IMG/VR virus record: IMGVR_UViG_3300023184_000024
Span: 124,001-188,000 of that record
Strand: one strand, 5' to 3'
Length of the DNA stretch: 64,000 bases
The notes below the pieces were generated by a model that was not told where the DNA came from, made no database searches, and saw nothing but the letters and a program-made list of their open reading frames with translations. A program made the position numbers and the translations under genes. Below, one piece after another: positions 32,836-48,878 of this stretch; the stretch's first letter is position 1, and every line of letters starts with the position of its first letter.

Positions 32836-34314
32836 TCATGAGCAAACCTTTACTCCATATAGTGCTTCAAAACGATCTGCGTCGTTGCGATCATTGACTA
32901 TGGGTTCGCCCCTAACATTCAAACTGGTGTTCAACAACATGGGACAACCGGTCTTTGCATACCAAGCTTCTAGTAGTTGTCTAATTCCACTTCCATCTCG
33001 CGGCACAGTCTGTACACGACTAGTGTTGTCAACATGACACACAGCAGGAAATAGGTCAGGATGCCGGCAACGAGCGATTGACTGCATGTACCTACTAGTA
33101 CCGAAGCCATGAGGCATATCAAAGTAATTGTCAACATGCTCTTCCAAAATGACTGGCGCAAATGGTCTGAATTTTTGTCTACGTTTGATTTCATTTACAC
33201 GATCCTTGATGTCTATGCCACGCGGGTCAGCGAGTAGACTGCGGTTACCCAACGCACGGGGTCCGAACTCGGCTCGACCACTAGCAACCCCAACAATCCC
33301 AGTATCCAATAGATGAGCCATTGCAGTGTGGACAGGATAAGGGCCAGTAATGTTGCGGCCCAAAAAAGCAGTGTGCCAATGTAAACGGCCACCGTGGGCA
33401 AGAGCGGCGGCGCCAAGACTAGAACCAGCATCGCCAGGACAAGGTAGTATCCAAATTTTTTCAAAATATTTTCCCAAATGTCTATTGGCCAGGCAATTTA
33501 GTGCAACCCCGCCCATGTATACAAGATTTGTGCTCCACCCAAAATTTCTTGCACGTTGCATGACGTTTTGAATTAGATCTTCAGTGATCAACTGTGCCGC
33601 ACATGCAATATCTTCGTTGGTGGCTGATTCTAAAAATGTCGAGTCAAACCCAACATGCAAATTGTTAGCAAATTCAATGTTTTCAAAATCCTTGATAACG
33701 TTTGTGGCCATACTGCGATACCATGTATCTTTGCCCCAGGCGGCCATGCCCATGGTGATGTATTCTTCGTCTAAGGGGTGTAACCCCACCCTGCTAGTAA
33801 TTGCACTGTAGAACAGTCCAATTGAATGCGGATAATTTTTTTGCCAAAGTTTACGATACTTTGCCATGCCTGTTTGATCATATTCTGCTCCCCAAATTGT
33901 TATAGTTTCCCATTCGCCAATGGCGTCAATTACAACCACCGTGGCTCGTTGATAGGGACTGGTTTGAAATCCAGCGGCTGCATGACTGAGATGATGATTG
34001 TAGTTGAGCACACGCTCAGGCTCAATTTGACCGCCCAGTTGTTTTTTTAATATTTGCTGTACAGTAAATTTGTCCCACTCAATGCCCTGTCCTGCATACC
34101 ATTGACGCAGTTGTTTCAGCCAAGGACGTTCGTAGTATGCAACCACATCTGGCCCATGTTCCAGCACATCATCCAACAGTCCTTGGCAAAAGTCAGGATC
34201 GTTTTTCTTTTTTGAGTAACGTTCTGAATGTCCAGCAAACAATATCTCCCCGTTGGGAGAAATCACAGTTGCGGCTGCATCATGGAATCCGGCACTGATA
34301 CCTAGTATATTCAT
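32836..34314 (-). CDS. carbamoyltransferase, NodU/CmcH/TobZ family
   Basis: HDAAA, HHLSHA, GGVALNC, GRAEFGPRALGNRS, RPFAP, LNTSLN. Confidence 0.95.
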   Translation of the reverse strand: MNILGISAGFHDAAATVISPNGEILFAGHSERYSKKKNDPDFCQGLLDDVLEHGPDVVAYYERPWLKQLRQWYAGQGIEWDKFTVQQILKKQLGGQIEPERVLNYNHHLSHAAAGFQTSPYQRATVVVIDAIGEWETITIWGAEYDQTGMAKYRKLWQKNYPHSIGLFYSAITSRVGLHPLDEEYITMGMAAWGKDTWYRSMATNVIKDFENIEFANNLHVGFDSTFLESATNEDIACAAQLITEDLIQNVMQRARNFGWSTNLVYMGGVALNCLANRHLGKYFEKIWILPCPGDAGSSLGAAALAHGGRLHWHTAFLGRNITGPYPVHTAMAHLLDTGIVGVASGRAEFGPRALGNRSLLADPRGIDIKDRVNEIKRRQKFRPFAPVILEEHVDNYFDMPHGFGTSRYMQSIARCRHPDLFPAVCHVDNTSRVQTVPRDGSGIRQLLEAWYAKTGCPMLLNTSLNVRGEPIVNDRNDADRFEALYGVKVCS

Positions 34315-34412
34315 TTGTAGATAAATGGGTCTCGTTTGCGTAGTTCTTTGATTTTTCGACGATATTTAATTTCTAAAACTATTCTATTGTAAATTCTTAA
34401 AATCCATTTCAT
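34311..34412 (-). CDS. 33-aa peptide MKWILRIYNRIVLEIKYRRKIKELRKRDPFIYK
   Basis: ATGA-coupled on both sides; below the ORF track cutoff. Confidence 0.7.
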   Translation of the reverse strand: MKWILRIYNRIVLEIKYRRKIKELRKRDPFIYK

Positions 34413-35497
34413 GTTGCATTCCTTGATTGGTAGTCATAGCCTGGCCGCATTTGATCAATTTGTTGTTGTTCGTAATCAGCATCACTCCAACAGTAGTTGT
34501 AAACTGCCTTGGTATCTTTTATTTCTACAGAGTATATATCTAAATGAGTACCGAGTATGTTCCAAATATCTTGATAATTTTCGGTGCCAAAGCTCTGTTT
34601 AAGATTTACTTGTCCCACTGGCAAATGCCCTAGGCTCAATTTGGGATCTTGAGGGTCTAACCCATTATTGCTCAACCATTCCCGAAATGAACCAATTGTT
34701 TTGTCGTGCCAAGGATGCTTGCCGCCCAGAGTAATATCATTGCCCCACTCTATATCAAACTCGCCCGAGTAATATTCTAAATGCGTGATAGCTTCGCACA
34801 CTGTGGCTGTAAGTTCTGGAGCGCCTTCGTCTCTAAACACCTCCATCAGAGTTTTACCAATCTGTGCCCAGTGCATGTACACGCCGCCAAACACACGATC
34901 ATATCCGTTGGAGACAAAGCCTTGGCGATGTTCATCTTCTAGCTTGTATCGAGGAGCATTAATCCAAGTAGTAATCTGACTTGGACGCAACCAGTATGGA
35001 TTTGTTTCTGCTTTGCGTAAACCCAATATTAGATTTTCTGCTTCGTGACAAATTAAATTTAACTGTCGTATAGCATACTTGGTTGCATAGTCAGCTCGTT
35101 GATAATACACACTTAGATTTCCTACTGTGCCTTGCAGTACCTCAAAATGGTTGTGTAGTTTATTAAACAACTCGTGATTTACCCCATTGGGACTATGGTC
35201 TGTGGCAAGCACATTGGTTGTTGTAAATACTTCATCAATTTGATATCCCGATAGGTTGGTATTAATTGTGCTGATATGACGGTTAAGCTCGTTACACAAA
35301 TATTCAATGTCACGGGCAGTCTTAGGAAATCCCATAAAACAAAAGTTTTTTTCTAATAAGTTTCCTGAATTCAATAACTTCTTGAGTGCAACTACCCAGT
35401 CAACTGCCAATTGATGATCCTGCACATCAATGACATAATCTACTGTGTCATTTTTATGCAAAGGGTTGCGTAAAATAATTTTAACCTGGGATTTCAT
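34409..35497 (-). CDS. hypothetical protein
   Basis: 362-aa ORF in operon; some resemblance to 4618..5424 (KLH..FE, LN..CH..E). Confidence 0.75.
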   Translation of the reverse strand: MKSQVKIILRNPLHKNDTVDYVIDVQDHQLAVDWVVALKKLLNSGNLLEKNFCFMGFPKTARDIEYLCNELNRHISTINTNLSGYQIDEVFTTTNVLATDHSPNGVNHELFNKLHNHFEVLQGTVGNLSVYYQRADYATKYAIRQLNLICHEAENLILGLRKAETNPYWLRPSQITTWINAPRYKLEDEHRQGFVSNGYDRVFGGVYMHWAQIGKTLMEVFRDEGAPELTATVCEAITHLEYYSGEFDIEWGNDITLGGKHPWHDKTIGSFREWLSNNGLDPQDPKLSLGHLPVGQVNLKQSFGTENYQDIWNILGTHLDIYSVEIKDTKAVYNYCWSDADYEQQQIDQMRPGYDYQSRNAT

Positions 35498-36776
35498 TCC
35501 ACCACCTTGTTACTTCTTCACGGCCGGACAATATTTGTTGCATGCTGGTTGCACTTGTTCTTATGTTTTCTAATCTCAACACTCGCTGTTTTCCGCGAAC
35601 AAGTGCATCCTGATACCGGTCTGGCCATTGTTCTGCAAAGGTAGGACGATTTTTTAATTGTAGTAGAACATCACGCATGGCACCTGTAGAGCGTCCTGCT
35701 AATTCGTCAACCCAGGGATCTAATAACTCTCGAGGTAGAGCTAATGGGCTCATTACTACATCTGGAGTAAAACTAAAAATCACTTTGGCCAACAATTCTA
35801 CATTGTAGTCACGAGCCAACTCTTGAATAGCATCTACTTCAAACATGCCTGGCAATGTCAGTGTAAAGTCTAATCGCATTTGTCTACGATTCTTCTGGTA
35901 CTTTAATCCTTGCTCAAAGTTGTCACAGAACTGTTTGTAATCAAGTCCTGTTCGGATGTATTCTCCTGTGGTTCCTGTTCCGTCGAGGCTGGCGCAAATT
36001 TGCCAATCTCGAACATTAGATAAAATATCACGATATAGATTACTACCCCGAAAATCAACGCGACTAAGATTGGTGTTATACCTTGCATATACTTGTCCTC
36101 CATCCCCTAATTCAATTATACGTTTCATGTATCTCCAGTGTTGCTCGTACATCAAAGGCTCGCCGCCTACCCAATATACTTCTTCCACTCGATGTTGCTC
36201 TACAGCTAGAGCGAACTCTGCTTCAATTTGTTGGTCCTGAAATTGGCTTATTTCTGCTCGAACTTCAGGCCTCATCCATGTGTTTTTAGGGTTGCCCCAA
36301 TCAATCATGTCATGTTGTCGCTGTTCGCTTTCCCATGCACTACTTAACATATCGCCACATGTGCGACATTTAAAATTGCAAAGATTACTAAAACGATAAT
36401 CCCAACTCACCGGTTTCATTGTTGTGGTGCCATCTTCTGTGGTTGAATCGACTACCTCATCCCACTTGTGTTTAAACAAATGCCAGAAATATGTACGGTA
36501 AACATCAGTATTCAGCAACTTGTTGTTGCAGACGTCACACTCGGGCAATGTATCTCCGTTTAACATGCGTCGACGCACACTTCGCATATGGTCACTGTTC
36601 CAATGCTGATCTAGGGTGATGGGTATATACTTACCAGTGCCCGCTGTTGTGTCAATGTACTGTTGAAAATTCTGGGCGGGTTCTCTGCTGGCGCAACACA
36701 TCCTGCGCTCAGTTTGCGGGCTCAAGTATGTGTGCGTCCAAGGCGCCATGCAAAAATTATTCGGTGGCGAGATCAT
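35481..36776 (-). CDS. twitch-domain radical SAM protein
   Basis: FCMAPW..MCC, CNFKCRTC, GGEP, NTN, SLDG. Confidence 0.9.
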   Translation of the reverse strand: MISPPNNFCMAPWTHTYLSPQTERRMCCASREPAQNFQQYIDTTAGTGKYIPITLDQHWNSDHMRSVRRRMLNGDTLPECDVCNNKLLNTDVYRTYFWHLFKHKWDEVVDSTTEDGTTTMKPVSWDYRFSNLCNFKCRTCGDMLSSAWESEQRQHDMIDWGNPKNTWMRPEVRAEISQFQDQQIEAEFALAVEQHRVEEVYWVGGEPLMYEQHWRYMKRIIELGDGGQVYARYNTNLSRVDFRGSNLYRDILSNVRDWQICASLDGTGTTGEYIRTGLDYKQFCDNFEQGLKYQKNRRQMRLDFTLTLPGMFEVDAIQELARDYNVELLAKVIFSFTPDVVMSPLALPRELLDPWVDELAGRSTGAMRDVLLQLKNRPTFAEQWPDRYQDALVRGKQRVLRLENIRTSATSMQQILSGREEVTRWWNEIPG

Positions 36777-37980
36777 AGTCTAGCAGGGTTGCCAATTCGG
36801 GCGCCACAGTTTTTAAATTTTGAGATCTACGAACATCAAGATGTTTAATTTGGCTTTTGGTCATGAAGCCATCTGTGCTGGCTCCATTGTTCATGAAATC
36901 AATGATTCGATCAAATTCGGTTTGAAATTTTGCAGGAATTTCAGCGTTTTGTAAATGTTGAGTGATGACTTTCTTGGCAGTGTCGGGTAGATTGGCAATA
37001 CTAAAATACCAAGCATCGTGCATCATATTCCAATACACAAAATTAAACGGTTTATGTTCCAACCACTGTGCCACTTGATCAATGTAGCGTACATTAAACA
37101 CATTCACCGTGGTGCATACCTGCAGTTGTATCGTCATGGGCAGGTAACGTTTTAATTCAAAAAACTTTTTAATATTTTCTTGTACTTCTGTCCATACAGC
37201 ATTACTGCGTTGGTATTCAAATCTTTCCCCAATGTCGTCGATGCTGAATGCTATTTCTACTGTTTTAAAATGCTGCCAAATGTCTGGACCTCTTTCAGGG
37301 AATATTGTACCATTGGTGTTGTAGTGTATTTCTACATTGCCTGCAATGCCTCTTTCAACAATGCGTTCCAACATGTCAAAATGCTCTTGTATCATAAACG
37401 GTTCGCCGCCTGTGAATTCAATATACTGTATGTGGTCGAGTACTTGATCAATTTCTGACCAAAATGTTTGGTTTTTTCTGGGCCAGGCACCTTTTCTAAG
37501 CATGATATAATGTTCGCTGGATTTTTTATCTTCGTGTTCAGGAAGACTGTTGATTTCTTCTGAGGCAAACGTGCTTGAACTCCAGGAACCGCAAATGCGA
37601 CATTTTAGATTACAAATATTTCCCAGTTTGAGATCAAGAAATTGCAAAGGTTTTGATTCATCGGTCCATTCTTGATCAGGGATCACATGCTTTAATCGAT
37701 TGATAGTGTGCATTCGTTTACTAGTGCGACCGGCAGCTTCCTCTTTCCAGCACTTGCGACAAGTTTGCGGACGTTCGCCATCTAAGAACTGTTGTCTAAG
37801 TTTTTTCATAGACTGACTGTCTTGTATCTCTACAAAGCTTGCAGTGTTCAAATCAAACTTTTGTCCTTGATCATTGCGAATTTCGTCGTCGGCCAGGCAA
37901 CATGGTCTCACTGTGCCTATTGGACTAGTCTCTAAACTTATCCAGGGCAATACACAGAATTTATCGTGTGGGATATTCAT
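36757..37980 (-). CDS. twitch-domain radical SAM protein
   Basis: FCVLPW..PCC, CNLKCRIC, GGEP, NTNG. Confidence 0.9.
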   Translation of the reverse strand: MNIPHDKFCVLPWISLETSPIGTVRPCCLADDEIRNDQGQKFDLNTASFVEIQDSQSMKKLRQQFLDGERPQTCRKCWKEEAAGRTSKRMHTINRLKHVIPDQEWTDESKPLQFLDLKLGNICNLKCRICGSWSSSTFASEEINSLPEHEDKKSSEHYIMLRKGAWPRKNQTFWSEIDQVLDHIQYIEFTGGEPFMIQEHFDMLERIVERGIAGNVEIHYNTNGTIFPERGPDIWQHFKTVEIAFSIDDIGERFEYQRSNAVWTEVQENIKKFFELKRYLPMTIQLQVCTTVNVFNVRYIDQVAQWLEHKPFNFVYWNMMHDAWYFSIANLPDTAKKVITQHLQNAEIPAKFQTEFDRIIDFMNNGASTDGFMTKSQIKHLDVRRSQNLKTVAPELATLLDYDLATE

Positions 37981-39239
37981 AACAGTGCCTTTAACTCGGG
38001 TATTACATTACTCCAAGACTCATTTCTAATGCTATCTAACTCATGCGTTTTGCGCCAGAACGTGTCGATTAAATGAGTGTTGTCTGTGGTGTTCATGAAA
38101 GTAATAGCACTTTCAAATCCTGTGGTAGCACGGTGCAACGGATCTTGATCACGCAACCATTCCAAATGTTGCTCATATTTTTCTTGTATACGAGCTTTGT
38201 ATTCTGCTGGTGCAATGTCTATTCTATAGTGTGCAGGATCTTGCAAGATGTTTACATTTAAATCCTGTGCTCGAATAAGACCTTGATCAACCCAGGCACG
38301 ATGGAAGTCGGGCAAATGCAACGCATTCATTATGCTTAATGTAGGACTGATATAAAAGTCCACGTTGGGGCAAATGGCCATCATATCTCGACGATTTTGT
38401 TGTACCACAGCCCAGTCTGTACCTTTGCGTATGTACTCTCCACGAACACCCATATCATCTAAACTGGCGCCAACTGCAACAGACTGGAACTGTTTCCAAT
38501 ACTCAAATACACTACGTCCTTTTAAGTCTGTGTGAGTGAAGTTTGTGTTGTATATTAAGCGCACATCAAATCGTCGGCGGCGAACCAATTCATCTAGGAT
38601 ACGATAATGCTCTTCCATTAACAATGGCTCACCACCGGCAAAATAGATTTGTTCTACGTAGTCTAAATGCGGTTCTAGTTGTTGCCACATGTCCGTTTCT
38701 GTGCGGCCGGCATAGTTTAGCACAGTGTTGCGTTCTTTCCAATCGCCACCGGCCAGCTTGGCTTGGTCCTGGTACCATTGACTGCTAAAGATATGACCAC
38801 AGCTACGGCATTTTAAATTACACAAATTGCTGAAACGAATATCCCAATAAGTCATTTCAAAAGGATTGGTCTCTAGCTTTTTAATATGATGTCCGTGGTG
38901 CTTGTTGGCACTACGTCGACCACTAAAGAATCCCGACTCTTCTTGTTCATAACAACGTGTGCAGGCTGCATTGGGTGTTTCACTCAGCATGTCTGTGCGT
39001 AGTCGTTGCATGGGTTTGTCACGCCAGATTTCTTCAAGTGTGTTTGTTCTACAATTGCCCACTACACCGGGTTTCATTTCGGCATGGCAGCAAGGGTATG
39101 CCTCGCCCGTGGGGTAAGCATGTAAATGAATCCAGGGATAGATACAAAATGTTTTTGAGTCTTGTAACAAGAACTGTTCACGCTGTGTTAGTTCTACTGG
39201 TTTCACTAAGTCAGTTGAATTATAGTTATAATCTGCCAT
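37977..39239 (-). CDS. twitch-domain radical SAM protein
   Basis: FCIYPW..PCC, CNLKCRSC, GGEP. Confidence 0.9.
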   Translation of the reverse strand: MADYNYNSTDLVKPVELTQREQFLLQDSKTFCIYPWIHLHAYPTGEAYPCCHAEMKPGVVGNCRTNTLEEIWRDKPMQRLRTDMLSETPNAACTRCYEQEESGFFSGRRSANKHHGHHIKKLETNPFEMTYWDIRFSNLCNLKCRSCGHIFSSQWYQDQAKLAGGDWKERNTVLNYAGRTETDMWQQLEPHLDYVEQIYFAGGEPLLMEEHYRILDELVRRRRFDVRLIYNTNFTHTDLKGRSVFEYWKQFQSVAVGASLDDMGVRGEYIRKGTDWAVVQQNRRDMMAICPNVDFYISPTLSIMNALHLPDFHRAWVDQGLIRAQDLNVNILQDPAHYRIDIAPAEYKARIQEKYEQHLEWLRDQDPLHRATTGFESAITFMNTTDNTHLIDTFWRKTHELDSIRNESWSNVIPELKALL

Positions 39240-40548
39240 ACCACTCTTTTAAATTAGGGAACGTTTCATTAAAATTTTTATATCGTCGAGCATCGTACTG
39301 CAAATGGAACTCTTTAAAATCATGCAACAATGTTGGCATGTCAAATGTTTCACTGTGCGGAGTTTTTACAACGTCCAAGTAATCAATTAATCTTTGTGTG
39401 TGATTTATTTCGTGCTCGTGCAAGTAACTGTGGTCTTTGTGTCGCATTAACCACTCAGTCAGATTCTGTTTGTAATGTTCTCGCAAATCCTCACTCAGTA
39501 CTAAAGCACTCTGAAAGCTGGGAAAACGCAAGATGTTTAATGTAAAATTAAGGTACTCACGACCGTATTGTTTTTTCCAAGCAACTAATTGATCTAAATG
39601 GTCAGACAAGCTGTCCAAGCACAAGGCATTAATGGTGCACATACAATGAACTACTATACCTGCATCCAATAGTTTTAACACATTGTTGCACCAAGCACGG
39701 TAATCCAACCCGTCACGGATGTATTCGGCTTGGCTTCCTGTGGCTTCCATGGAAGTGTAGATTTCAACTTGTAAGCCCTTGGTGCTGGCCAACAGTCGAT
39801 CTACATCTACGTCTGCTCCTAGATTTGAATTAATAGCCAGGCGTGTATTAGTTCGCCCAGGGTTGTTTTTAAACCAATCAATCAGTTTCCAGGTGTAGCC
39901 ACTCATTAGCGGCTCTCCGCCGGTGATTCTTAGTTCTTGTAGTGTTCTGTGGAGGTCTGATTCCCACCATTCAAAGAACGCTTCCACGTACGGATTAGTT
40001 TCACCGAATTTATACAATTGAGCACTATTATGCTCGTGAGTAAAATGGTTACGACCGTCTGACTCCAGTTTAAGGTAAGGTCCGTTCTTTTTAATGTCGT
40101 TGACCCATGTACTACTAAAAGCAGGATTGCAATAACTGCAAGCAAACTGGCAAGTTCTATCAAACGCAATTTCCAAGGTGCGGAGATCAACGTCTTGGTC
40201 AACAGGAGTGTTATATGCTTCATTCAAGGCCTTTATAGGATAAATTTTACTTTTGTACACACGGTCACTGACAGCATTGGTGTCCATGTCTTCAATTTTC
40301 CAGCAGTATTCGCAACCAGGTGGACGTTCGCCAGCTAGCATCTGGCGCCGGTCTTCTTTCTTTTGTGCTGTATTATGTATTGCTTTGGGATTGGTTTTGA
40401 ACTCAGCACCAATGGTGTGTGCAGGAGGATGATGGCAACTGGTTGTTTGTCCTGAACCTAACCATATAGTAGCATTATACCATTTGGCCGCACAAAAGCT
40501 TGAACTTTTAGTGTCTAATATTTGCGTTTTAAAGTCGCGATCGTTCAC
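39226..40548 (-). CDS. twitch-domain radical SAM protein
   Basis: FCAAKW..SCHHP, CEYCW, CQFACSYC, GGEP. Confidence 0.9.
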   Translation of the reverse strand: MNDRDFKTQILDTKSSSFCAAKWYNATIWLGSGQTTSCHHPPAHTIGAEFKTNPKAIHNTAQKKEDRRQMLAGERPPGCEYCWKIEDMDTNAVSDRVYKSKIYPIKALNEAYNTPVDQDVDLRTLEIAFDRTCQFACSYCNPAFSSTWVNDIKKNGPYLKLESDGRNHFTHEHNSAQLYKFGETNPYVEAFFEWWESDLHRTLQELRITGGEPLMSGYTWKLIDWFKNNPGRTNTRLAINSNLGADVDVDRLLASTKGLQVEIYTSMEATGSQAEYIRDGLDYRAWCNNVLKLLDAGIVVHCMCTINALCLDSLSDHLDQLVAWKKQYGREYLNFTLNILRFPSFQSALVLSEDLREHYKQNLTEWLMRHKDHSYLHEHEINHTQRLIDYLDVVKTPHSETFDMPTLLHDFKEFHLQYDARRYKNFNETFPNLKEWYGRL

Positions 40549-41687
40549 TGTGTATTTTCTCTGATGAAATTTAAAAATCGGTTTGGAAAGTTGTCAACCA
40601 AATCTCTGCGATATTCTGCTAGTCGTTGTTGATTATATTTACAAATATCTTGCGAGGCTGCTAGGAAATCAACTAAATCTCCGCGACATAAATCTTCAAC
40701 CACTTCGGCAATTCTTTCGATGCGATCTAAATCATGTTCTATACTGTCAAAACTTTCATCAATTAAATTGCCAAAAGTTTTAAATCCAATTCTATGCATG
40801 TCTCGATAAAACCCTGCATTGGCCACAGCAATCCAGGGATGGGCCATGGCAATAGGTTTCCATATCTTCTCGGTGCGGAAGCTGTAGGGATTATGAAAAA
40901 TAGTTTCAGTTACTAGGCTAAAGTATGTGTCAATGTACGGCTCGGCCTTGAGGTATGCTTCGCCCCATTCGTTGTTGAACAAGCTGTGTTTGACCAAACT
41001 TGTATTGGTGGTATCTAAATTATCAAGCTGATCGCTGTATCTATCAACTTCGTAGTGTTTGGGCAATAGGCGCAGTGGTGATTCTTTAGCCATTAAGTTT
41101 TCCCCGTTGTGCCATAATGGTAGACGAGTTGCACCTGCTGTGCCCAATGTACTAAGACAAGTATACAGACTGTGTTCTAGTAGTCCAGTTGTTCTAAATT
41201 TTTCCAACAACCATTTACGATGCTGACGATGCCGTCCATTTAAAAATAAAAACTTATAGGGCTTATGTGTTTTTTTGTAGATGTCAGTCCATCTCTGAGC
41301 AACAACATCATTGTCATCAAGTTTGAGCAAATTATCAACAAATCCATCGTAGTTGTAATAACAGAATTCTGGGCTCATGTCGCCGCCGGCCAGCAACATT
41401 ATTTTTCTTTCACGTGCCAACTCTGTTATATTATATCGACGCAACTGCCCTATCATTGTGTCGGCACCTTCCCAGGGATTGCTAAAAATAATGTTGGCTT
41501 GGCCAGATTGTGCAACTTCTTCTATTAGTTTGTGGTAATGCTCAAATTGCCAAGGCCCCAACAGATATGTAGCGCCAGGCTCGATATTAATCTTATCAAA
41601 GAACTGGAACTCGCCGTCTAATGCCGAGCCGATAATATCGTAAATTCCGCAGTGGTATCCACTGTACAACTTAACGTTTTTTTGCAT
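40545..41687 (-). CDS. glycosyltransferase-like protein (GT10-like TEK motif)
   Basis: FLFLNGR.R.HR, SLVTET, TEKIWKP, GFKTF..LIDESFD. Confidence 0.55.
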   Translation of the reverse strand: MQKNVKLYSGYHCGIYDIIGSALDGEFQFFDKINIEPGATYLLGPWQFEHYHKLIEEVAQSGQANIIFSNPWEGADTMIGQLRRYNITELARERKIMLLAGGDMSPEFCYYNYDGFVDNLLKLDDNDVVAQRWTDIYKKTHKPYKFLFLNGRHRQHRKWLLEKFRTTGLLEHSLYTCLSTLGTAGATRLPLWHNGENLMAKESPLRLLPKHYEVDRYSDQLDNLDTTNTSLVKHSLFNNEWGEAYLKAEPYIDTYFSLVTETIFHNPYSFRTEKIWKPIAMAHPWIAVANAGFYRDMHRIGFKTFGNLIDESFDSIEHDLDRIERIAEVVEDLCRGDLVDFLAASQDICKYNQQRLAEYRRDLVDNFPNRFLNFIRENTQ

Positions 41688-43620
41688 GGTACTCGCACTC
41701 AGCCCACCAAGACTGCATTTCAGGAAATGCTGTTAAGAAACTAGTCCCTCGTCGACGGTCGTGCTCTGAGAAGAATTGATAAAAGTCTCCTTTGGCTGTG
41801 CTATGATCATCCAATTGCTTTTGCCGCATCCACGAGATGTCTCTTTCTAGTCGTTGCACTTCGTAGTCCTTGAATCCTTGAAATGGCGATAGATTGGATT
41901 CTAGATTGTTGGACATAAAAGTCTTGGAAGATTCTAACACACAGGCATAGCTTTCGGGAAGTATTTGTAAGCTTTGCCAACTGGGTTGTCGTAGTACCGG
42001 TGTATCAAACCACACACGCTGATATGTCTTACTGTGTTTTTTTCTTAGTTCTAAAATTCCGTTAAGCAGTTTCTGGAAACTAGTAACCGATAAATTATTC
42101 ATGGTCACAATGAAAGTCAAACTATTATAACTAGGAACTTGTGTTAGATATTGATCGACCCTGCTCCAAACAAGATCAAAATCCATGCCGTGTCTAATGT
42201 ATTCGGCTTGACTTCCCCAGGCATCCAAACTTACATACTGCATGAAATGTTCAATCTGCCCATTGCAAATTTTCTTAACATAATCTAGGTATCGATCAAA
42301 TAGCCGTTGTTCCACTGAAAAATTAGAAGTCACATTGAGGTGTAATTTAGGATTGGGATTCTCTAACACGTAATCAAACACCTTGTAGGTATTCTTATCC
42401 ATTAGGGGTTCTCCACCAGTCATGCGAAAGTGTTCAAGCTCAGGATATAACTCGGGCCACCATTTCCAGAACGCATCAACATAGGGGTTGTCTTCGCGTA
42501 CCGGTATTGGTTTGTTATGTCCAACAAAATGCTCAGGTGCATTGTGTGGAGTTGACGTCGGATATGCACCGAATCGATCTATTTCGTCTTGCCAACTTGA
42601 GCTAAACTGAGGGCTACAATAACTACATTTAAGATTGCAGGCATGATTAAAATTAACTTCAACATAGCTGGGATTGATATTATCAGTCCACTCTGCACTA
42701 ACAATTTTACCAAAGTCTTTGGCTGCCCAAGGTTCTCCACTACGATAAAATCTATCGCTGAGATTGCCAAGGTCCTCCATGTTCCAGCAATAGCTACACT
42801 CACTGGGACGTTTGCCGTTGAGCATGAGCCTTCGCTGTTCTTTTTTGTGCGTTGTATTGTGCAGGGCACTGGGGCTACGAGTTATATCCTCAATGGGAAT
42901 ACGGTGTAACGGTGGGTGGTAACAACTGTTGTTTAATCCGGTGGGCAGGTGCAGGCTGACCTGTTTCCATTTGGCCAAACACAGGCTGGGACTATACTCA
43001 TCCAATCTCATGCGCATTTTTTCTGCATCATCTAGAAACTTTGATTTGAATCCATCTTCGACTTTTTCTGTTGGCAATTCTGCTAGGCTTTTTGCTTTTA
43101 ATCGATTGAGGTATGTGAGTGTGCGATCAAATATATCACTGCTGGATAATTCTAATTCTTGTTTCATCATTTGCGCAAACTCACCGAGATCTGTGTCAAT
43201 GTCAATTACCAAATCTGCACCTGTGGTATCCAGAGGATATTGTGCATAATAATTTAAATGATAGGAAATGGTGCTTTGAGCATTTTCCATCGGGTCGTCT
43301 AACTGTCTTTTATTTGCTCGTTGTTGACCGGCCAGCACCCATTCGCGTCTAATGCACTTGTCAAGATTCCCATGTATGATTACCACTGGCCGGTCCGGCC
43401 AATGTTGCTTGAGCAATGGTACATTCACACAGTGGGTTAGTATTATTGGTTCTGATTCAAGCCCAATTGTGTCATTGGATAGATATCGAAATTTTGTTTG
43501 ATCGCCTTTATTTTCATAGAATTGTTGATCATAAACAAAATTAGATTTAAAGTCTCGCTGACCTTGTGAATACAAGTAGTAACGGTTGCCTCCTGCACCT
43601 GGATAGTAGCCAATAATCAT
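41671..43620 (-). CDS. twitch-domain radical SAM protein with extra N-terminal domain
   Basis: N-terminal YPGAGGN domain; LCLAKW..SCYHP, CNLKCSYC, GGEP. Confidence 0.88.
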   Translation of the reverse strand: MIIGYYPGAGGNRYYLYSQGQRDFKSNFVYDQQFYENKGDQTKFRYLSNDTIGLESEPIILTHCVNVPLLKQHWPDRPVVIIHGNLDKCIRREWVLAGQQRANKRQLDDPMENAQSTISYHLNYYAQYPLDTTGADLVIDIDTDLGEFAQMMKQELELSSSDIFDRTLTYLNRLKAKSLAELPTEKVEDGFKSKFLDDAEKMRMRLDEYSPSLCLAKWKQVSLHLPTGLNNSCYHPPLHRIPIEDITRSPSALHNTTHKKEQRRLMLNGKRPSECSYCWNMEDLGNLSDRFYRSGEPWAAKDFGKIVSAEWTDNINPSYVEVNFNHACNLKCSYCSPQFSSSWQDEIDRFGAYPTSTPHNAPEHFVGHNKPIPVREDNPYVDAFWKWWPELYPELEHFRMTGGEPLMDKNTYKVFDYVLENPNPKLHLNVTSNFSVEQRLFDRYLDYVKKICNGQIEHFMQYVSLDAWGSQAEYIRHGMDFDLVWSRVDQYLTQVPSYNSLTFIVTMNNLSVTSFQKLLNGILELRKKHSKTYQRVWFDTPVLRQPSWQSLQILPESYACVLESSKTFMSNNLESNLSPFQGFKDYEVQRLERDISWMRQKQLDDHSTAKGDFYQFFSEHDRRRGTSFLTAFPEMQSWWAECEYHAKKR

Positions 43621-44693
43621 AGTTCTAACAGTTGTAATAATCTATGTGAAAAAAATATGTTTTTGTTATTTTGATTTTTAATTTTAGAAACAAGTTCTTT
43701 ACATTGCAAATAATCAACATGCGTTTTTGACAGCACATCGTGATCAATGTATGTACCGTTGTTAATCTCCCACGAGTCCGGAGTTGGTGTTGGTGTTCTG
43801 CTCCAAGTTCCCCAGTCGTCTAGTTGATGTAGTACTCCTTTGAACCCATAGTCGCAACAAATGCGAACAAAATTTTCCATGTCTAAAAAGTTATTTTTTT
43901 GCACAGCAAAATTTAATGTTGTGATATGTTGCTTATTGATTGTTTTTACATAATCAAAGTTCTCTAAAAGTATTTTCCAACTTCCGCCTAATCTAACATT
44001 TTCATAGACCTCAGACGACCCTGCATCAACACTGATTCCTAAATCTACAATATTGTTTAAAATTGGACTGTCAGACAGTTGTTTTTTAATCAGTAGCCCG
44101 TTGGTAAGCAATTTAAAAATCTGTGTGCTTTTTGGTTTCCAAGACTTAATAAGAGGTCGGGTAATCTGACTGGCCAGCGGGTCGCCGTTGCCTGACATGG
44201 TAATTCTGATAGGTCTTTCAAAATTGTCAAGCCATTGGATGATGCGTTCAACGTCTTTCTTTTTACTTTCAACAACATCACCGTCTAAATGCATGATTGG
44301 GGCTCGTCGGCAACTGGGGCAATGTAAATTGCAACTATCATCAATGTTGATGCTTATGGTGTTTATCTGATTGATGATATTTTGTTTTTTAATTCCGCAA
44401 TGATCTACTGCGCACCAGGTAAACTTTTTATTTTCAACGTCATCTTGCAAAGTTTTTGCAATTGGACTATTCCATAGTTCGTCAAGACTATTAAAATCTT
44501 TTACTTTACCAACCGGGATTGGCAACCAACCGTCACAGGTGCATACAAAACAATCAGAATTGGAATCAACAATCAACGACATGTAAGGAACATTGCAACT
44601 ATTTGTAATAGTTTCTGTTGCGCCTTTGCCTCTAGGCATGGATTTAAGCTTGTGTGCCAGTCCCGGAGTTAGATCAAAATATGACATTACCAA
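43617..44693 (-). CDS. radical SAM protein with N-terminal Cys-rich domain
   Basis: CFVCTC.GWLP, CNLHCPSC, SVDA..VYENVR.GG. Confidence 0.85.
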   Translation of the reverse strand: MVMSYFDLTPGLAHKLKSMPRGKGATETITNSCNVPYMSLIVDSNSDCFVCTCDGWLPIPVGKVKDFNSLDELWNSPIAKTLQDDVENKKFTWCAVDHCGIKKQNIINQINTISINIDDSCNLHCPSCRRAPIMHLDGDVVESKKKDVERIIQWLDNFERPIRITMSGNGDPLASQITRPLIKSWKPKSTQIFKLLTNGLLIKKQLSDSPILNNIVDLGISVDAGSSEVYENVRLGGSWKILLENFDYVKTINKQHITTLNFAVQKNNFLDMENFVRICCDYGFKGVLHQLDDWGTWSRTPTPTPDSWEINNGTYIDHDVLSKTHVDYLQCKELVSKIKNQNNKNIFFSHRLLQLLEL

Positions 44694-45613
44694 CCTTCTT
44701 GCTGACGTATTACATCAATTTCGCGGACCATGACTCCTTGATTGTGCCAGTTACTTCGATAGTGATGTTTAAAAAACCCACTACCGCGGTCATCTAACAA
44801 TACAATGGGAAGATCGAGTTGTGTTGATAAATCTTCGGCCACTCTTCCTGCTACTACTTCTGGATCATGGTCTTTGACAGTATCCCAAAGCTCGGCCAGC
44901 ACATCAAAATTTTGCACTAGTTTATAGTCCCAGTTACTCAACATTGTCATGTAGGTTCCCTGCCTTGCTCCTGCAATTGACCAAGCGCCATTTTCTACAT
45001 CTCTTCCAACGTTGTGCCAAATCGTTAAATTCTCAAGATTCTTTTTATGAACCATGGTTCGAAAATCATTGACACTGGGCTTTGCGCCTTTGTTAAGACA
45101 CATTTTAACACCTTCACGGAATCCTGCTCGCCATGCCTGGAATGGAGACCCATTTGGGTAGGTTGTTGAGTAGCAGTCGTGCATTGCCCAATACAAGGGG
45201 TCGAAACAAAATTCAACCAATGTTTCATCACGTCCATCAGAGTTTTCGTGTGTGCGCATATTCCAAATATGTTCACGTGTCCACGAACTAATTCCTCCGT
45301 TGCCGTACATGAGGCCGTTGACATGATTTCGAGCTCTCCATCTATAAACTGCTTTGGCCCAATCATCATTGGTGTATTCTAAGGTAAGATTAAAAAACTT
45401 TTCGTCGGGCAAATTATCTCCGTCGATTAAAATAAACCGTTCAGTTGTGCTGGCATCTGCGGCTGCTTTATGGGCCGCATCACTGCCGTTGACTCCGTCA
45501 ACTCTGATTGCCCAAGGAATTGCATTTTTAATCTTTACCCAAAATTCTTCTTTTTGTGGCTCGTCATAGCTTAGATAAACACAATCAAGATCAGCAATAT
45601 CAATTTGTTCCAT
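44687..45613 (-). CDS. glycosyltransferase-like (GT-A, DxD) protein
   Basis: YLSYDEP, FILIDGDN. Confidence 0.6.
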   Translation of the reverse strand: MEQIDIADLDCVYLSYDEPQKEEFWVKIKNAIPWAIRVDGVNGSDAAHKAAADASTTERFILIDGDNLPDEKFFNLTLEYTNDDWAKAVYRWRARNHVNGLMYGNGGISSWTREHIWNMRTHENSDGRDETLVEFCFDPLYWAMHDCYSTTYPNGSPFQAWRAGFREGVKMCLNKGAKPSVNDFRTMVHKKNLENLTIWHNVGRDVENGAWSIAGARQGTYMTMLSNWDYKLVQNFDVLAELWDTVKDHDPEVVAGRVAEDLSTQLDLPIVLLDDRGSGFFKHHYRSNWHNQGVMVREIDVIRQQEGW

Positions 45614-45938
45614 TATTTTTTAAACTCCATTTGGTGTGTAACTGGTCACAGTTTACTATCACGGCCACATCACAGGGATCACAGCATGCCCCTTGAGTCT
45701 GATGTGGTTTTAATTTTTGTACAAAATTGTTGACATTTAACACAATTTTGTTATCTTTAACATGTATATTGCGCAGTGATTGGGCAAACTGTTCTTTGGT
45801 TATTTCAATGTAATTACCTGGTAGGTCTTCCATTGCGTAAAATGTCGGCTGTCCGTTGCCGTCATAGTAAAGTCTATAAAATATAGGGCCAGGCAAAGGA
45901 ATATCATGTAGTATTGTCCAAAACTCATCGGGCGTCAT
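45600..45938 (-). CDS. hypothetical protein
   Basis: 112-aa ORF in operon. Confidence 0.7.
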   Translation of the reverse strand: MTPDEFWTILHDIPLPGPIFYRLYYDGNGQPTFYAMEDLPGNYIEITKEQFAQSLRNIHVKDNKIVLNVNNFVQKLKPHQTQGACCDPCDVAVIVNCDQLHTKWSLKNNGTN

Positions 45939-46713
45939 TGAGCCATTCCTTTACATTATAGTGAAATGCGCCCCACTGAGCAATGGTGTTTATGCGAAGA
46001 TTGTCGTTCCATTCCCACACAAGCTCGTCTGTCCAATTTTCAGTGGCTGTGCCTGCGATATGTTTTTTCATATGTACAATTTTTGGATATTCACTGAACG
46101 GCAATGTGCATTTTTCCGGGCCAATTATTTGAGCGGCCATTGCATATACAAGATCTGTTGTGGGCACTTTGTCAGGAAATTTTAATATCTTTTGAAATTT
46201 GTCCCAATTTTCAAATATGCTTTTAACAAGATTAAAAAACTCTTGCGCATCCTTGCTAAGCCGCCAATATGTTATTGCATTGTAAACATCGGGTAAGTTG
46301 TTTTCATCAAATGTGCGTCGGTAATGCCGTGCATCACTGACTTCATCTTTCCAGTTTCTACACCCGGTACTGACAACAATATCTCTATGTCTAAACATAT
46401 TCCACCAGTGTTCAATTGAACTAGTAATCAACATGTCTGCTTCAAGTTTAATTGTTTCTCTAAATGGGGTCGCATGAAATACTTGCCAATCATTGCACTG
46501 ATGGTTGCCGCCGTTGCTTTGATCTCCGTTGGGCAAAGGCACGACATGATCAAACACAGGATCACTGCAACGATTTAATGTCATGACAGCAATTCTAGCA
46601 TCGGGGTGAAACTTTCTTATACTCTGAGCCAGTATTGACGCACACGCAACATAATCAACACTGTCTGTGTTCAGTGCCGGTATAAGGTAGCCTTGTTCTT
46701 CAATGGGCTTCAA
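45925..46713 (-). CDS. GT8-like glycosyltransferase
   Basis: DYVACA..LA.SI, TPF.ETIKLEADM, VHMK. Confidence 0.65.
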   Translation of the reverse strand: MKPIEEQGYLIPALNTDSVDYVACASILAQSIRKFHPDARIAVMTLNRCSDPVFDHVVPLPNGDQSNGGNHQCNDWQVFHATPFRETIKLEADMLITSSIEHWWNMFRHRDIVVSTGCRNWKDEVSDARHYRRTFDENNLPDVYNAITYWRLSKDAQEFFNLVKSIFENWDKFQKILKFPDKVPTTDLVYAMAAQIIGPEKCTLPFSEYPKIVHMKKHIAGTATENWTDELVWEWNDNLRINTIAQWGAFHYNVKEWLNDAR

Positions 46714-47503
46714 TTATTTTCCCCAAATGCTTTTTACCCATGACATGTAGGTCGGTGCCAAAAAATCCAATATTTCTACGAGCCCCTTTAACATCAACCC
46801 AATGTATATCAAACGAATCTTGTGCCAGCTGTGTAATTGCGTGGTCTGGCATGATTGTTGCAAGGTCCCATGGAATACTATCCACAGCCAGTGTGTGCCC
46901 GTTAACAATGCCCAATGCAATGCTCAATGCATAATCGTTGCGATAGGTTGATCGTTGTATGCCATACAAGTTTCTATAGTGCTGCCAATTATTTTTAATC
47001 ATCTGCATTGAATCAAAAATATATTGTGCGGTATTTGATTTACGAAACAGCATCACTGTTGCCCACCACATGGGCAACTTGTAATTGCCAAACCAATTAG
47101 ACTCATCAAAGTATCCAGGGCCTGTAATGTCCCAAGCGGTACGATGACACACAAAATCTAGATTAGAATTAAACAATACTTTCAATTTTGAACTGGCCAC
47201 AATATAATCAGCATCCAATACCAACGTTTGATCGTAGGGAGTTAACCTATATGCATCAACCCGGTTGGCATTGTACCAAGGAACAGTATGACCAATGTCG
47301 GAAAAATGCCGTTGGCCTCCCAATTCTTTGTCTACGACTATTACCTGTTCAAAATTAAAATTATCTGGAACCCGAGTGTTATCTGTTACCACTGTGGTAC
47401 CAATGCCAAGGTGTCTGCGAATATTTGCTGCACTCCAGTTGGCCATAGACAAATAATCTATGTCATCGTTGTTAAATGCAAAAATTAATGCGCCTGTGCT
47501 CAT
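46700..47503 (-). CDS. GT8-like glycosyltransferase
   Basis: TPYDQTLVLDADY (DxD), RNDYA, LHVMGK. Confidence 0.7.
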   Translation of the reverse strand: MSTGALIFAFNNDDIDYLSMANWSAANIRRHLGIGTTVVTDNTRVPDNFNFEQVIVVDKELGGQRHFSDIGHTVPWYNANRVDAYRLTPYDQTLVLDADYIVASSKLKVLFNSNLDFVCHRTAWDITGPGYFDESNWFGNYKLPMWWATVMLFRKSNTAQYIFDSMQMIKNNWQHYRNLYGIQRSTYRNDYALSIALGIVNGHTLAVDSIPWDLATIMPDHAITQLAQDSFDIHWVDVKGARRNIGFFGTDLHVMGKKHLGKIIEAH

Positions 47504-47882: not shown

Positions 47883-48878
47883 TTACGCCACTGATGCGGC
47901 TATAGTTGGTGTTCCCCAGCTAGCTGTCAAATATGTAGTCGATGGGGGGAAATAGGTAACAACTGTTGCCGGTGCTGTTCCAAACGAACCAAGTGGTGAT
48001 GCTGTGTCAGTTCCGCCAGTAATTTCATCACTGGATCCTGCTCCTGAACCACCAGGATCAACCCAAGTAGTTGTAAGAACTAATTGTGTTCCTGAACTGG
48101 CTGTTTTTGCATTAAGAGCAATGTATTGACCGGTGTAAGGTGCGGTGTCAGCATACTGTCTGTACAGCAACGTATCAGTGGTGCTCAAATTGTACCACCC
48201 AGTAGTGGTAGCCAACGTGTTGGGTGTACCAGTTCCGCCTGATTTAGTTGTTCCAGTATAGCTTGTGCCAGCAATGGTTTGAGCGGCTCCATTAACTCGT
48301 CCGGTGATAAAGATATCTCCGCACAAGGTTGTTGCCAAGTCGTTCCATTCAGCATCGGCTAATAAGCCGGTTGAAGATTTATTGGTTTCCCATTTAATAC
48401 GTCCACCAGCATTGAAAAAATAACGAGCAGCATCGGCACTGGCAAATTGTATGGTGTGTGTAAATGTTATTGTCCATGCATTAGTGCCCGAGCCAGTATT
48501 TGTTGTTTTTGCTGAGCTACCTGACCATGATGTGATCTGTGCGCCGGTTCCGGCAGCATTGCCACGATTGGTGGTAAGATTTGTTAAATCTGTGTTCATT
48601 GCTGCCAACACAGTAATTGTGTTTCCGGCAACTGGAGCACTTCTTGAGGTAATAGTGGTACCTTGCTGGTTTGCCACAGCGGTAATGCTGTTAACTAGAC
48701 TGGCCCATTGAGTGGCAGTAATAGTGCTAGATGCCGAGACAGTGGACAAGGGAGTTTGCCCGTAACCTTTGTCAGTTGCACCTGTACCATAAATGTCATT
48801 AAGATTTGCTCCGCTTGTTGTACTAACAAATCCGTTATAGTCTGTAGCTTGTATTAATCCACCCGATGAGTAAGTCAT
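47883..48878 (-). CDS. virion structural protein (tail/baseplate)
   Basis: Thr/Ser/Gly-rich; F...AARYFFNAGG motif; within structural operon. Confidence 0.7.
   Translation of the reverse strand: MTYSSGGLIQATDYNGFVSTTSGANLNDIYGTGATDKGYGQTPLSTVSASSTITATQWASLVNSITAVANQQGTTITSRSAPVAGNTITVLAAMNTDLTNLTTNRGNAAGTGAQITSWSGSSAKTTNTGSGTNAWTITFTHTIQFASADAARYFFNAGGRIKWETNKSSTGLLADAEWNDLATTLCGDIFITGRVNGAAQTIAGTSYTGTTKSGGTGTPNTLATTTGWYNLSTTDTLLYRQYADTAPYTGQYIALNAKTASSGTQLVLTTTWVDPGGSGAGSSDEITGGTDTASPLGSFGTAPATVVTYFPPSTTYLTASWGTPTIAASVA

What the first reader, a model, noticed from the sequence alone, without database searches (positions are those of the whole stretch)
35481..44693. Expansion of radical SAM paralogues with the auxiliary Cys domain at the N-terminus
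Six genes here, plus 19741..20805, carry a C..PW/KW...CC...CxxC twitch/SPASM-like module before the CxxxCxxC core. This is the reverse of the canonical C-terminal SPASM arrangement. Three subtypes are visible (FC..PW/CC; C.AKW/SC.HP; C.C.GW). With the B12-type enzyme there are eight radical SAM genes in 64 kb and no known substrate.
Basis: partly seen in the sequence, partly recalled or inferred. Interest (0 to 1): 0.6.

Follow-up and report, generated by a model that had tools for sequence, protein, structure and literature searches.

The report
Phage five-gene radical SAM module
A 353-kb freshwater jumbo phage carries a conserved operon of five old, divergent radical SAM enzymes whose extra iron-sulfur domain sits in front of the catalytic core; the enzyme family is already catalogued but has no known substrate, and here it is tied to glycosyltransferase genes.

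Summary
Window 35481-44693 (- strand) has seven overlapping ORFs, and six are radical SAM (rSAM) enzymes with a Cys-rich SPASM/twitch module before CxxxCxxC. ORF 19741-20805 (- strand) is a seventh. The B12-type gene 6452-8011 makes eight in the window.

The architecture is not new. Five of the six, plus a sixth copy elsewhere in the genome, score 287-397 bits against NCBIfam NF033640 "N_Twi_rSAM" (cut-off 170). I found no characterised member and no paper on the family.

"Expansion" is the wrong word. The five are 21-33% identical and fall into five separate ortholog groups. The order E-D-A-B-C recurs in phage contigs: all 80 best IMG/VR loci have at least two copies within 10 kb, and 58 have five to seven. 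Arrays also occur in bacteria.

The window lies in a complete 352,754-bp freshwater jumbo phage with 17 rSAM ORFs.

Co-conserved partners are GT-A-type glycosyltransferase-like proteins and a carbamoyltransferase. Sugar-nucleotide enzymes and fibre genes lie nearby.

Best reading (about 0.45): serial radical tailoring of a phage-made glycan, perhaps on virion proteins. The main rival is protein or peptide modification (0.25).

Verdict: new members of a known family in an undescribed conserved module. Interest 0.5.

The parts
37977..39239 (-). rSAM paralogue A (420 aa), N-terminal twitch + CxxxCxxC at residue 140
   Evidence: NF033640 397 bits. Pfam SPASM residues 32-97, 46.9 bits. AF2 model pLDDT 95.3, pTM 0.93. 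Present in 78 of 80 viral loci.
36757..37980 (-). rSAM paralogue B (407 aa)
   Evidence: NF033640 350 bits. SPASM residues 9-78. Own ortholog group with L016, L017 and L022.
35481..36776 (-). rSAM paralogue C (431 aa)
   Evidence: NF033640 287 bits. Own ortholog group with L016 and L022.
39226..40548 (-). rSAM paralogue D (440 aa), subtype CxAKW/SCxHPP
   Evidence: NF033640 293 bits. 51% identical to RsoM2USA_202 of the cultured Ralstonia phage RsoM2USA.
40545..41687 (-). 380-aa conserved non-rSAM gene between D and E; possibly a glycosyltransferase
   Evidence: No Pfam, NCBIfam or PHROG hit. Atlas: weak GT10-like lead (0.79), and a structural neighbour cluster of longer proteins that also carry Epimerase domains. 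Present in 40 of 61 related viral loci.
41671..43620 (-). rSAM paralogue E (649 aa): extra 207-aa N-terminal domain + N_Twi_rSAM at residues 210-638
   Evidence: NF033640 322 bits. The N-terminal domain is a separate 233-aa gene in relatives.
43617..44693 (-). Short rSAM (358 aa) with an N-terminal SPASM-like module; not a member of NF033640
   Evidence: SPASM residues 33-99, 23.2 bits, and Radical_SAM 33.2 bits. NF033640 only 41 bits. Present in only 8 of 61 related loci.
44687..45613 (-). GT-A-fold glycosyltransferase-like protein (308 aa); the most conserved partner of the rSAM set
   Evidence: Present in 57 of 61 related viral loci. AF2 pLDDT 93.4. Foldseek top hit is the PBCV-1 capsid glycosyltransferase 2p6w (E 2.9e-4), then SunS. 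VIA: B4GALNT1 Z 9.2, STIV A197 Z 8.7. D64 and D66 are near-invariant, a DxD motif.
45925..46713 (-). 262-aa paralogue of the next gene; probable NDP-sugar transferase
   Evidence: 23% identity to 46700-47503, E 4e-10. Present in 51 of 61 viral loci.
46700..47503 (-). 267-aa nucleotide-diphospho-sugar transferase-like protein
   Evidence: Atlas features score 0.95-0.96 to clusters carrying GT8 / Nucleotid_trans. Present in 51 of 61 viral loci.
34409..35497 (-). 362-aa conserved protein of unknown function, downstream of C
   Evidence: No family hit. Present in 47 of 61 viral loci.
32836..34314 (-). NodU/CmcH-type carbamoyltransferase
   Evidence: Carbam_trans_C 163.9 bits and Carbam_trans_N 118.4 bits. 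Present in 44 of 61 viral loci. Also lies next to N_Twi genes in 7 bacterial loci and in RsoM2USA.
25604..27710 (+). NDP-sugar epimerase/dehydratase (25604-26650) and DegT-type sugar aminotransferase (26688-27710)
   Evidence: Pfam Epimerase 152 bits; DegT_DnrJ_EryC1 204 bits.
19741..20805 (-). Short rSAM (354 aa) with an N-terminal SPASM-like module; not a member of NF033640
   Evidence: SPASM residues 5-67, 42.4 bits. NF033640 46 bits. 24% identical to 43617-44693, E 1e-23.
6452..8011 (+). B12-binding (class B) type rSAM inside the tRNA array
   Evidence: Radical_SAM 60.5 bits and weak B12-binding. Sub-threshold hits to B12-rSAM families.
47883..50264 (-). Fibre-like structural genes directly upstream of the operon
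   Evidence: 48888-50264 hits PHROG tail fibre / virion structural families. Co-conserved in 33-43 of 61 loci.

Best explanation
Shown:
- The region is the core of a conserved phage operon.
- It holds five anciently diverged members (A-E) of the N-terminal-twitch rSAM family NF033640, plus one shorter N-terminal-SPASM rSAM.
- Its ORFs overlap those of the adjoining GT-A-type glycosyltransferase-like gene and the downstream 362-aa gene. Two more NDP-sugar-transferase-like genes and a carbamoyltransferase continue the same-strand run.
- It lies between sugar-nucleotide enzymes and fibre genes of a 353-kb freshwater jumbo phage.
- Each N_Twi enzyme has a 70-90-residue N-terminal module with four conserved Cys (C-x17/18-C ... 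C-x2-C), then a linker, the CxxxCxxC/GGEP core, and a helical C-terminal domain.

Inferred:
- The four Cys hold one auxiliary [4Fe-4S] cluster, as in a twitch domain.
- Each paralogue cleaves SAM to the 5'-deoxyadenosyl radical and abstracts one particular hydrogen from a sugar of a phage-made glycan or its nucleotide- or lipid-linked precursor.
- The auxiliary cluster takes up the electron, as in BtrN- or anSME-type oxidation, or the radical resolves as epimerisation, dehydration or a cross-link.
- Five paralogues would mean five different positions or steps.
- The GT-A enzymes would build and attach the glycan, and the carbamoyltransferase would decorate it.
- The target would probably be virion (fibre or capsid) protein.
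For: Family and architecture. The BtrN twitch aligns to the N-terminal module (E 0.008). The core is nearest to anSME (Z 13.1), BlsE (12.9) and CteB (12.5).

Old conserved set:
- Five separate well-supported ortholog groups.
- At least 594 viral relatives.
- All 80 best viral loci have two or more copies and 58 have five to seven.
- The order EDABC is exact in 23 of 80 loci.

Glycan link in phages:
- The GT-A-like 44687-45613 is present in 57 of 61 related loci.
- The two NDP-sugar-transferase-like genes are each in 51 of 61, and the carbamoyltransferase in 44 of 61.
- GT-A fold with a DxD motif and an Atlas GT8-like lead.
- An epimerase gene sits inside the array in relatives.
- Epimerase and DegT genes lie in the window.

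Glycan link in bacteria: recurrent neighbours of N_Twi genes are SGNH/AlgX-like proteins (13 loci), Wzt ABC ATPase with Wzt_C (9), epimerase (8), carbamoyltransferase (7), GT1/GT4 and a sulfotransferase.

Cultured phage: RsoM2USA has a D-type gene 2 kb from a carbamoyltransferase.
Against: - No member has a known substrate.
- The bacterial arrays that hold the true orthologues of A-E (L022, L019) have no glycosyltransferase in the operon.
- Other family members are fused to TPR or Sel1 repeats, which usually bind proteins.
- The closest solved cores include peptide-modifying enzymes.
- In Paenibacillus the neighbours are ACP, KS, KR and a thioesterase.
- The GT-A assignment rests on fold matches of middling strength (Z 8-9).
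- The acceptor (virion protein) is inferred only from adjacency to fibre genes.
- No RNA evidence is available.
- The neighbour counts come from related loci, so they are not independent.
Confidence: 0.45

Rival explanations
1. The five enzymes modify a protein or peptide, either virion protein side chains or a RiPP-like product. Any glycosyltransferases would act on the same protein.
For: - Nearest solved relatives of the core include anSME, CteB, SkfB and SuiB.
- Family members elsewhere are fused to TPR or Sel1 repeats at either end.
- The L022 bacterial array has no GT, but it does have a 110-aa secreted Cys-rich Sel1-like ORF inside it.
- The GT-A partner's best fold matches include protein- and peptide-glycosylating enzymes (PBCV-1 A64R, SunS).
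Against: - Family scans of the seven ORFs named no peptide-recognition domain; I did not test specifically for an RRE.
- No conserved small precursor ORF was seen in the phage operon.
- The set is strongly co-conserved with sugar-handling genes.
- Bacterial neighbours are typical of polysaccharide export and decoration.
Confidence: 0.25
2. The operon makes a free small molecule, for example an aminoglycoside-like or glycolipid product, rather than decorating a macromolecule.
For: - BtrN, the twitch prototype, acts in aminoglycoside synthesis (my own knowledge); its twitch aligns weakly here.
- Carbamoyltransferase, DegT aminotransferase and epimerase are also typical of such pathways.
- The Paenibacillus locus has ACP/KS/KR/thioesterase/GT2.
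- PhyH- and WelO5-type oxygenases recur nearby in bacteria.
Against: - The phage operon lies among fibre genes, together with three or four GT-A-like proteins.
- No exporter and no scaffold-forming enzyme was seen in the window.
Confidence: 0.1
3. The enzymes act on nucleotides or nucleic acid: DNA hypermodification, tRNA modification, or a viperin-like nucleotide product.
For: - Weak sub-threshold hits to viperin and MoaA.
- ThyX, a 27-gene tRNA array and further rSAM genes lie in the same window.
Against: - No ThyA-family pyrimidine hydroxymethylase in the genome at E <= 0.1.
- The hits are far below cut-offs (18-32 bits against 180).
- The operon partners are GT-A-like proteins and fibres.
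- Bacterial homologues sit with Wzt-type exporters.
Confidence: 0.08
4. A recent lineage-specific gene expansion with redundant or decaying copies, which is how the finding was titled.
For: Tandem arrangement, same strand, shared architecture.
Against: - Pairwise identity is only 21-33%.
- Each copy has its own orthologues in distant phages and bacteria, on well-supported branches.
- All copies keep the Cys ligands and GGEP.
- The order is conserved across loci in which A is 38-87% identical to the window's copy.
Confidence: 0.02

Closest known systems
NCBIfam NF033640 'N_Twi_rSAM' (twitch domain-containing radical SAM protein)
   Same: Five window genes and one more in the genome pass the curated cut-off over the full model length. 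They have the same N-terminal four-Cys module followed by the CxxxCxxC core.
   Different: The family is only a name: no substrate, structure or paper was found. It was built for bacterial annotation; here it appears as a fixed five-paralogue set in phages. The two short genes are outside the family.
BtrN (PDB 4m7t), the twitch-domain rSAM dehydrogenase of butirosin synthesis
   Same: One auxiliary cluster on four Cys. The BtrN twitch (chain residues 185-259) aligns with the N-terminal module of the profile. As I recall, its ligand spacing is about the same. It has a sugar-like substrate.
   Different: In BtrN the twitch follows the core; here it precedes it. The sequence match is weak (E 0.008). 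There is no evidence that the chemistry is the same.
anSME / CteB / SkfB / BlsE (SPASM and twitch rSAM enzymes with solved structures)
   Same: These are the best structural matches to the core: Z 12-13 over about 210-225 residues.
   Different: Their auxiliary domains are C-terminal. anSME and CteB hold two auxiliary clusters on seven or eight Cys; here there are only four or five Cys. TM-scores are only 0.35-0.45 because the domain order differs.
Virus-encoded glycosylation machinery, for example chlorovirus PBCV-1 A64R (PDB 2p6w)
   Same: The most conserved partner gene (44687-45613) has a GT-A fold whose best Foldseek match is A64R. It lies next to structural genes.
   Different: To my knowledge, no rSAM enzymes are known in that system. 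The match is at fold level only (E 2.9e-4, TM 0.30-0.40).
Ralstonia phage RsoM2USA (343.8 kb, cultured), gene RsoM2USA_202
   Same: Jumbo phage of a betaproteobacterium. Gene 202 is 51% identical to paralogue D, and a carbamoyltransferase 44% identical to 32836-34314 lies 2 kb away.
   Different: Only one strong copy lies in that 25-kb stretch. All genes there are annotated as hypothetical.

Membership tests
NF033640 N_Twi_rSAM | Whole-protein score at or above the curated cut-off (170 bits) over the full model | tested here: met
   287, 350, 397, 293 and 322 bits for 35481, 36757, 37977, 39226 and 41671; 309 bits for genome 288590-289720.
NF033640 N_Twi_rSAM (the two short genes 43617-44693 and 19741-20805) | Whole-protein score at or above 170 bits | tested here: not met
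   41.4 and 45.7 bits. They share the domain order but are a different family, closest to each other (24% identity, E 1e-23).
NF033640 N_Twi_rSAM | Cys-rich twitch module N-terminal to CxxxCxxC | tested here: met
   Conserved C32, C50, C93 and C96 before C140/C144/C147. Pfam SPASM lies before Radical_SAM.
Twitch subclass (one auxiliary [4Fe-4S]) | An auxiliary Fe-S cluster is actually bound by the four Cys | not testable with these tools
   Needs reconstitution and EPR/Mossbauer, or a structure.
Full SPASM subclass (two auxiliary clusters) | Seven or eight Cys in the auxiliary domain | tested here: not met
   Only four to six Cys precede the core, and four are conserved.
RiPP-maturase rSAM enzymes | Peptide-recognition (RRE) domain and an adjacent precursor peptide gene | tested here: inconclusive
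   No specific RRE test was run; Pfam and NCBIfam scans of the seven ORFs named none, and hits to maturase families are 15-43 bits against cut-offs of 300-650. No conserved small ORF was recognised, but short ORFs were not searched systematically.
Class B (B12-binding) rSAM, for gene 6452-8011 | N-terminal B12-binding domain plus an rSAM core | tested here: inconclusive
   Radical_SAM 60.5 bits. B12-binding 21.8 bits is below the gathering score of 32.1. Best NCBIfam hits are all B12-rSAM families, but far below their cut-offs.
GT-A glycosyltransferases, for 44687-45613 | GT-A Rossmann-like fold with a DxD motif | tested here: met
   AF2 pLDDT 93.4. The listed Foldseek matches are mostly GT-A enzymes. 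VIA Z 8-9.2 over residues 3-154, with nucleotidyltransferases of the same fold also listed. D64 and D66 are near-invariant. Activity was not tested.

The most novel reading that the evidence does not exclude
A fixed set of five N-terminal-twitch rSAM enzymes, spread through abundant freshwater jumbo phages, carries out a series of radical reactions on a virus-made glycan or glycoprotein. That would be a viral surface-modification pathway with enzyme chemistry not yet described for any member of this large family (1,435 clusters at 50% identity with E <= 1e-30).
Probability: 0.3. Interest if true: 0.75.

Novelty: new member of a known kind. Interest (0 to 1): 0.5.

Why it matters
- The family is very large but has no known substrate. 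There are 6,057 clusters at 50% identity with E <= 1e-10, and at least 594 copies in IMG/VR.
- A conserved five-enzyme set with fixed partners gives enzymologists a defined pathway to reconstitute, instead of a lone orphan.
- The cultured phage RsoM2USA offers a genetic handle.
- If the product decorates virions, abundant lake phages would be building elaborate, radically tailored glycans of their own. That bears on host recognition and on phage-host arms races.
- Seventeen rSAM ORFs in one phage genome is, to my knowledge, exceptional. I did not compare the count across phage genomes.

Tried and rejected
- Megablast of the region against GenBank phages: no match.
- Paper searches for 'N-terminal twitch', 'N-terminal SPASM', the RefSeq product name, rSAM with jumbo phages, and rSAM with O-antigen: nothing on this family.
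- The profile of the six paralogues was too divergent for a locus scan. A 90-sequence alignment worked.
- 'Relatives' cannot be drawn for a virus record.
- The 609-aa ORF 27679-29508 was considered as the 'B12-type enzyme' and rejected: it has no CxxxCxxC and no family hit.
- PDB sequence searches of four neighbour proteins gave nothing useful.
- Pfam GT8 and GT2 searches of the genome gave only a weak GT2 hit in 44687-45613 (E 0.027), and hits in a second region at 277-282 kb.
- The N-terminal domain of E shows no significant similarity to the sulfotransferase-like neighbour in L047.
- The promoter and terminator scan is not above chance overall.
- No RNA run holds the region.
- Laying contigs from an independent study showed identical short pieces but no spanning contig.
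Full report
**What is there.**
- Window 35481-44693 holds seven ORFs on the - strand. Neighbouring ORFs overlap by 4-20 nt, and the run continues in the same way down to 34409 and up to 45613.
- Six of the seven have a CxxxCxxC motif, at residues 121-140, or at 328 in the 649-aa protein. Four to six cysteines precede each motif.
- Pfam puts its SPASM domain in front of Radical_SAM.
- NCBIfam NF033640, 'N_Twi_rSAM, twitch domain-containing radical SAM protein', matches five of them end to end at 287-397 bits, against a curated cut-off of 170.
- The seventh ORF (40545-41687) is not rSAM.
- 19741-20805 is a - strand gene of the same general build.
- The eighth rSAM of the window is the B12-type gene 6452-8011. 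The 609-aa ORF 27679-29508 is not rSAM.

**The auxiliary module.**
- Across the six family members, C32, C50, C93 and C96 (numbering of the 37977-39239 protein) are invariant. So are the three core Cys, GGEP, an EYxR motif and several Arg.
- In a 90-sequence alignment of distant relatives, C93 and C96 are still invariant and C32 and C50 are conserved in at least 90% of sequences.
- Four ligands suggest one auxiliary cluster, which is a twitch rather than a full SPASM domain.
- A profile of the paralogues aligns its N-terminal part to the C-terminal twitch of BtrN, weakly (E 0.008).
- The AlphaFold model of paralogue A is very confident (pLDDT 95.3, pTM 0.93).
- Its core matches anSME (Z 13.1), BlsE (12.9), CteB (12.5), SkfB, viperin and MoaA.
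- No solved structure belongs to the family.
- I could not read the model's coordinates, so the position of the module relative to the active site was not measured.

**The genome.**
- The window is bases 124001-188000 of a complete virus record of 352,754 bp with direct terminal repeats.
- It carries 27 tRNA genes and a permuted, betaproteobacterial-type tmRNA.
- The same DNA occurs in lake and freshwater metagenomes from independent studies. The protein search returned 7,889 relatives of paralogue A at E <= 0.001, and its best 120 hits are 84-90% identical.
- The genome holds 17 rSAM ORFs:
  - six N_Twi members;
  - the two short N-terminal-SPASM genes;
  - five small rSAMs with the motif near residue 17;
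  - four B12-type genes.

**Not an expansion but an old, fixed set.**
- The five clustered paralogues, which I call A (37977), B (36757), C (35481), D (39226) and E (41671), are only 21-33% identical to each other.
- In a tree of 75 domains they fall into five separate, well-supported groups.
- Each group also holds a gene of a sister phage, and a gene of an eight-gene array on a contig binned to a Bacteriovoracaceae genome. That array sits beside ribosomal protein, Obg and Lgt genes.
- A scan of IMG/VR found at least 594 relatives.
- Of the 80 best viral loci, in which A is 38-87% identical to the window's copy, all have at least two strong copies within 10 kb and 58 have five to seven.
- The order E-D-A-B-C is exact in 23 of the 80, and is embedded with extra copies in many more.
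- Bacterial loci also show arrays of two to eight copies, in Bacteriovoracaceae, Oligoflexia, Crocinitomicaceae and Saprospiraceae.
- The family as a whole is large: 1,435 clusters at 50% identity with E <= 1e-30.

**What travels with it in phages.** Counts are out of 61 related viral loci.
- 44687-45613: 57.
- 45925-46713 and 46700-47503: 51 each.
- 34409-35497: 47.
- The carbamoyltransferase 32836-34314: 44.
- 40545-41687: 40.
- The fibre-like genes upstream: 33-43.

**What the partner genes look like.**
- The model of 44687-45613 (pLDDT 93.4) has a GT-A fold. The best Foldseek match is the PBCV-1 capsid glycosyltransferase, followed by SunS. VIA gives Z 8-9.2 to GT-A enzymes. A DxD motif is near-invariant.
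- 46700-47503 resembles GT8 / NDP-sugar transferases by language-model features, and 45925-46713 is its paralogue.
- In relatives an epimerase gene lies inside the rSAM array.
- The window also has an NDP-sugar epimerase/dehydratase and a DegT aminotransferase 8-10 kb away.

**What travels with it in bacteria.**
- The commonest neighbours of N_Twi genes are SGNH/AlgX-like proteins, PhyH dioxygenases, a Wzt-type ABC ATPase with the Wzt_C domain, epimerases and carbamoyltransferases.
- A Crocinitomicaceae chromosome adds GT1/GT4 and a sulfotransferase.
- The cultured Ralstonia phage RsoM2USA has a D-type gene (51% identity) 2 kb from a carbamoyltransferase.

**Most likely function.**
- I take the set to be a series of radical tailoring steps on a phage-made glycan or its activated precursor. 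The glycan would be built and attached by the GT-A enzymes, carbamoylated, and probably placed on virion proteins.
- The family assignment, the conserved Cys pattern, the age of the set, its synteny and its gene partners are shown.
- The second Fe-S cluster, the chemistry, the sugar substrate and the acceptor are inferred.

**Evidence pointing away from that reading.**
- The bacterial arrays with true orthologues of A-E have no glycosyltransferase in the operon.
- Many family members elsewhere are fused to TPR or Sel1 repeats.
- The nearest solved cores include peptide modifiers.
- A Paenibacillus locus looks like fatty-acid or polyketide chemistry.

**Weights.** Glycan 0.45, protein or peptide 0.25, free metabolite 0.10, nucleotide or nucleic acid 0.08. 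The last is weakened by the lack of any ThyA-type hydroxymethylase in the genome. A recent redundant expansion is essentially excluded.

**Comparison with what is known.**
- Five genes are members of NF033640 by its own curated threshold. The two short genes are not.
- The arrangement 'twitch first' is therefore already catalogued.
- I found no paper, structure or named function for it.
- What appears undescribed is the fixed five-paralogue module with GT-A partners in abundant freshwater jumbo phages, and the count of 17 rSAM ORFs in one phage.
- I file it as new members of a known kind, interest 0.5. The more novel reading, a viral glycan or glycoprotein radical-tailoring pathway, has probability 0.3.

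Noticed in passing
window 131-9022 and 12708-13133: 27 tRNA genes, and a permuted (two-piece) tmRNA that matches Rfam tmRNA_permuted (111 bits) and beta_tmRNA (84 bits), with tag ANDEQFALAA. This points to a betaproteobacterial host.
   Followed up: partly
window 6452-8011; genome 121520-123274, 5302-6738, 213458-214951: Four B12-type rSAM genes. One sits inside the tRNA array and a KedN5-like one (185 bits) lies just upstream of it. With five further small rSAMs the genome has 17 rSAM ORFs.
   Followed up: partly
window 51068-64000 (- strand, runs off the window): Giant ORF of at least 4,310 aa with FG-GAP and CBM5/12 matches. Probably a fibre or adhesin, just upstream of the fibre-like genes and the glyco/rSAM operon.
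   Followed up: partly
window 17324-18325: TctC/Bug-type periplasmic solute-binding protein (115.7 bits) encoded by a phage. To my knowledge that family is typical of Betaproteobacteria.
   Followed up: no
window 18456-19559 and 21261-22556: A MoxR-type AAA ATPase and a DUF2201 metallopeptidase/VWA protein flank the short rSAM 19741-20805, which is on the opposite strand.
   Followed up: no
window 13444-16218: 924-aa protein with a Peptidase_G2 intramolecular-chaperone autoproteolytic domain (120.8 bits), as in tailspikes and fibres.
   Followed up: no
L015, L016 (NZ_JBBAKG010000001.1 and ...003.1): Two contigs (183 and 148 kb) of the MAG 'Haliscomenobacter sp. EUL_031' are syntenic with this phage (83-84% identity in A; the same partner genes). 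They look like phage contigs binned into a bacterial genome.
   Followed up: partly
L030-L058 and L081 (Elusimicrobia bin MJ-2014_bin-0981): About 18 contigs of one bin carry N_Twi_rSAM domains, many as tandem runs of 600-1,200-aa proteins. The three such proteins scanned are fused to long TPR arrays. Sel1 fusions occur in other Elusimicrobia.
   Followed up: partly
window 43000-43620 (N-terminal 207 aa of paralogue E): This domain (motif PGAGGNRY) is a separate 233-aa gene in related phages (36-49% identity in two blocks). It has no family match.
   Followed up: partly
window 27679-29508: 609-aa ORF that aligns with the GT-A-like 44687-45613 family at 26% identity. It contains a repeated FDFSWHP motif. 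Present in 35 of 80 viral loci.
   Followed up: partly
genome 277517-281709 and 288590-289720: A second group of GT8/GT2-like matches lies 7-11 kb from the sixth N_Twi_rSAM gene.
   Followed up: no
window 47863-47818 (- strand): A GC-rich hairpin with a T run, followed at once by a promoter-like TTTACT-17-TATAAT, in the only sizeable gap upstream of the operon. It may mark the operon start. The scan as a whole is not above chance.
   Followed up: no
window 39120-40194: An independent freshwater run holds a variant contig with 45 substitutions and two small indels over paralogue D, beside identical pieces. This indicates co-existing strains.
   Followed up: no
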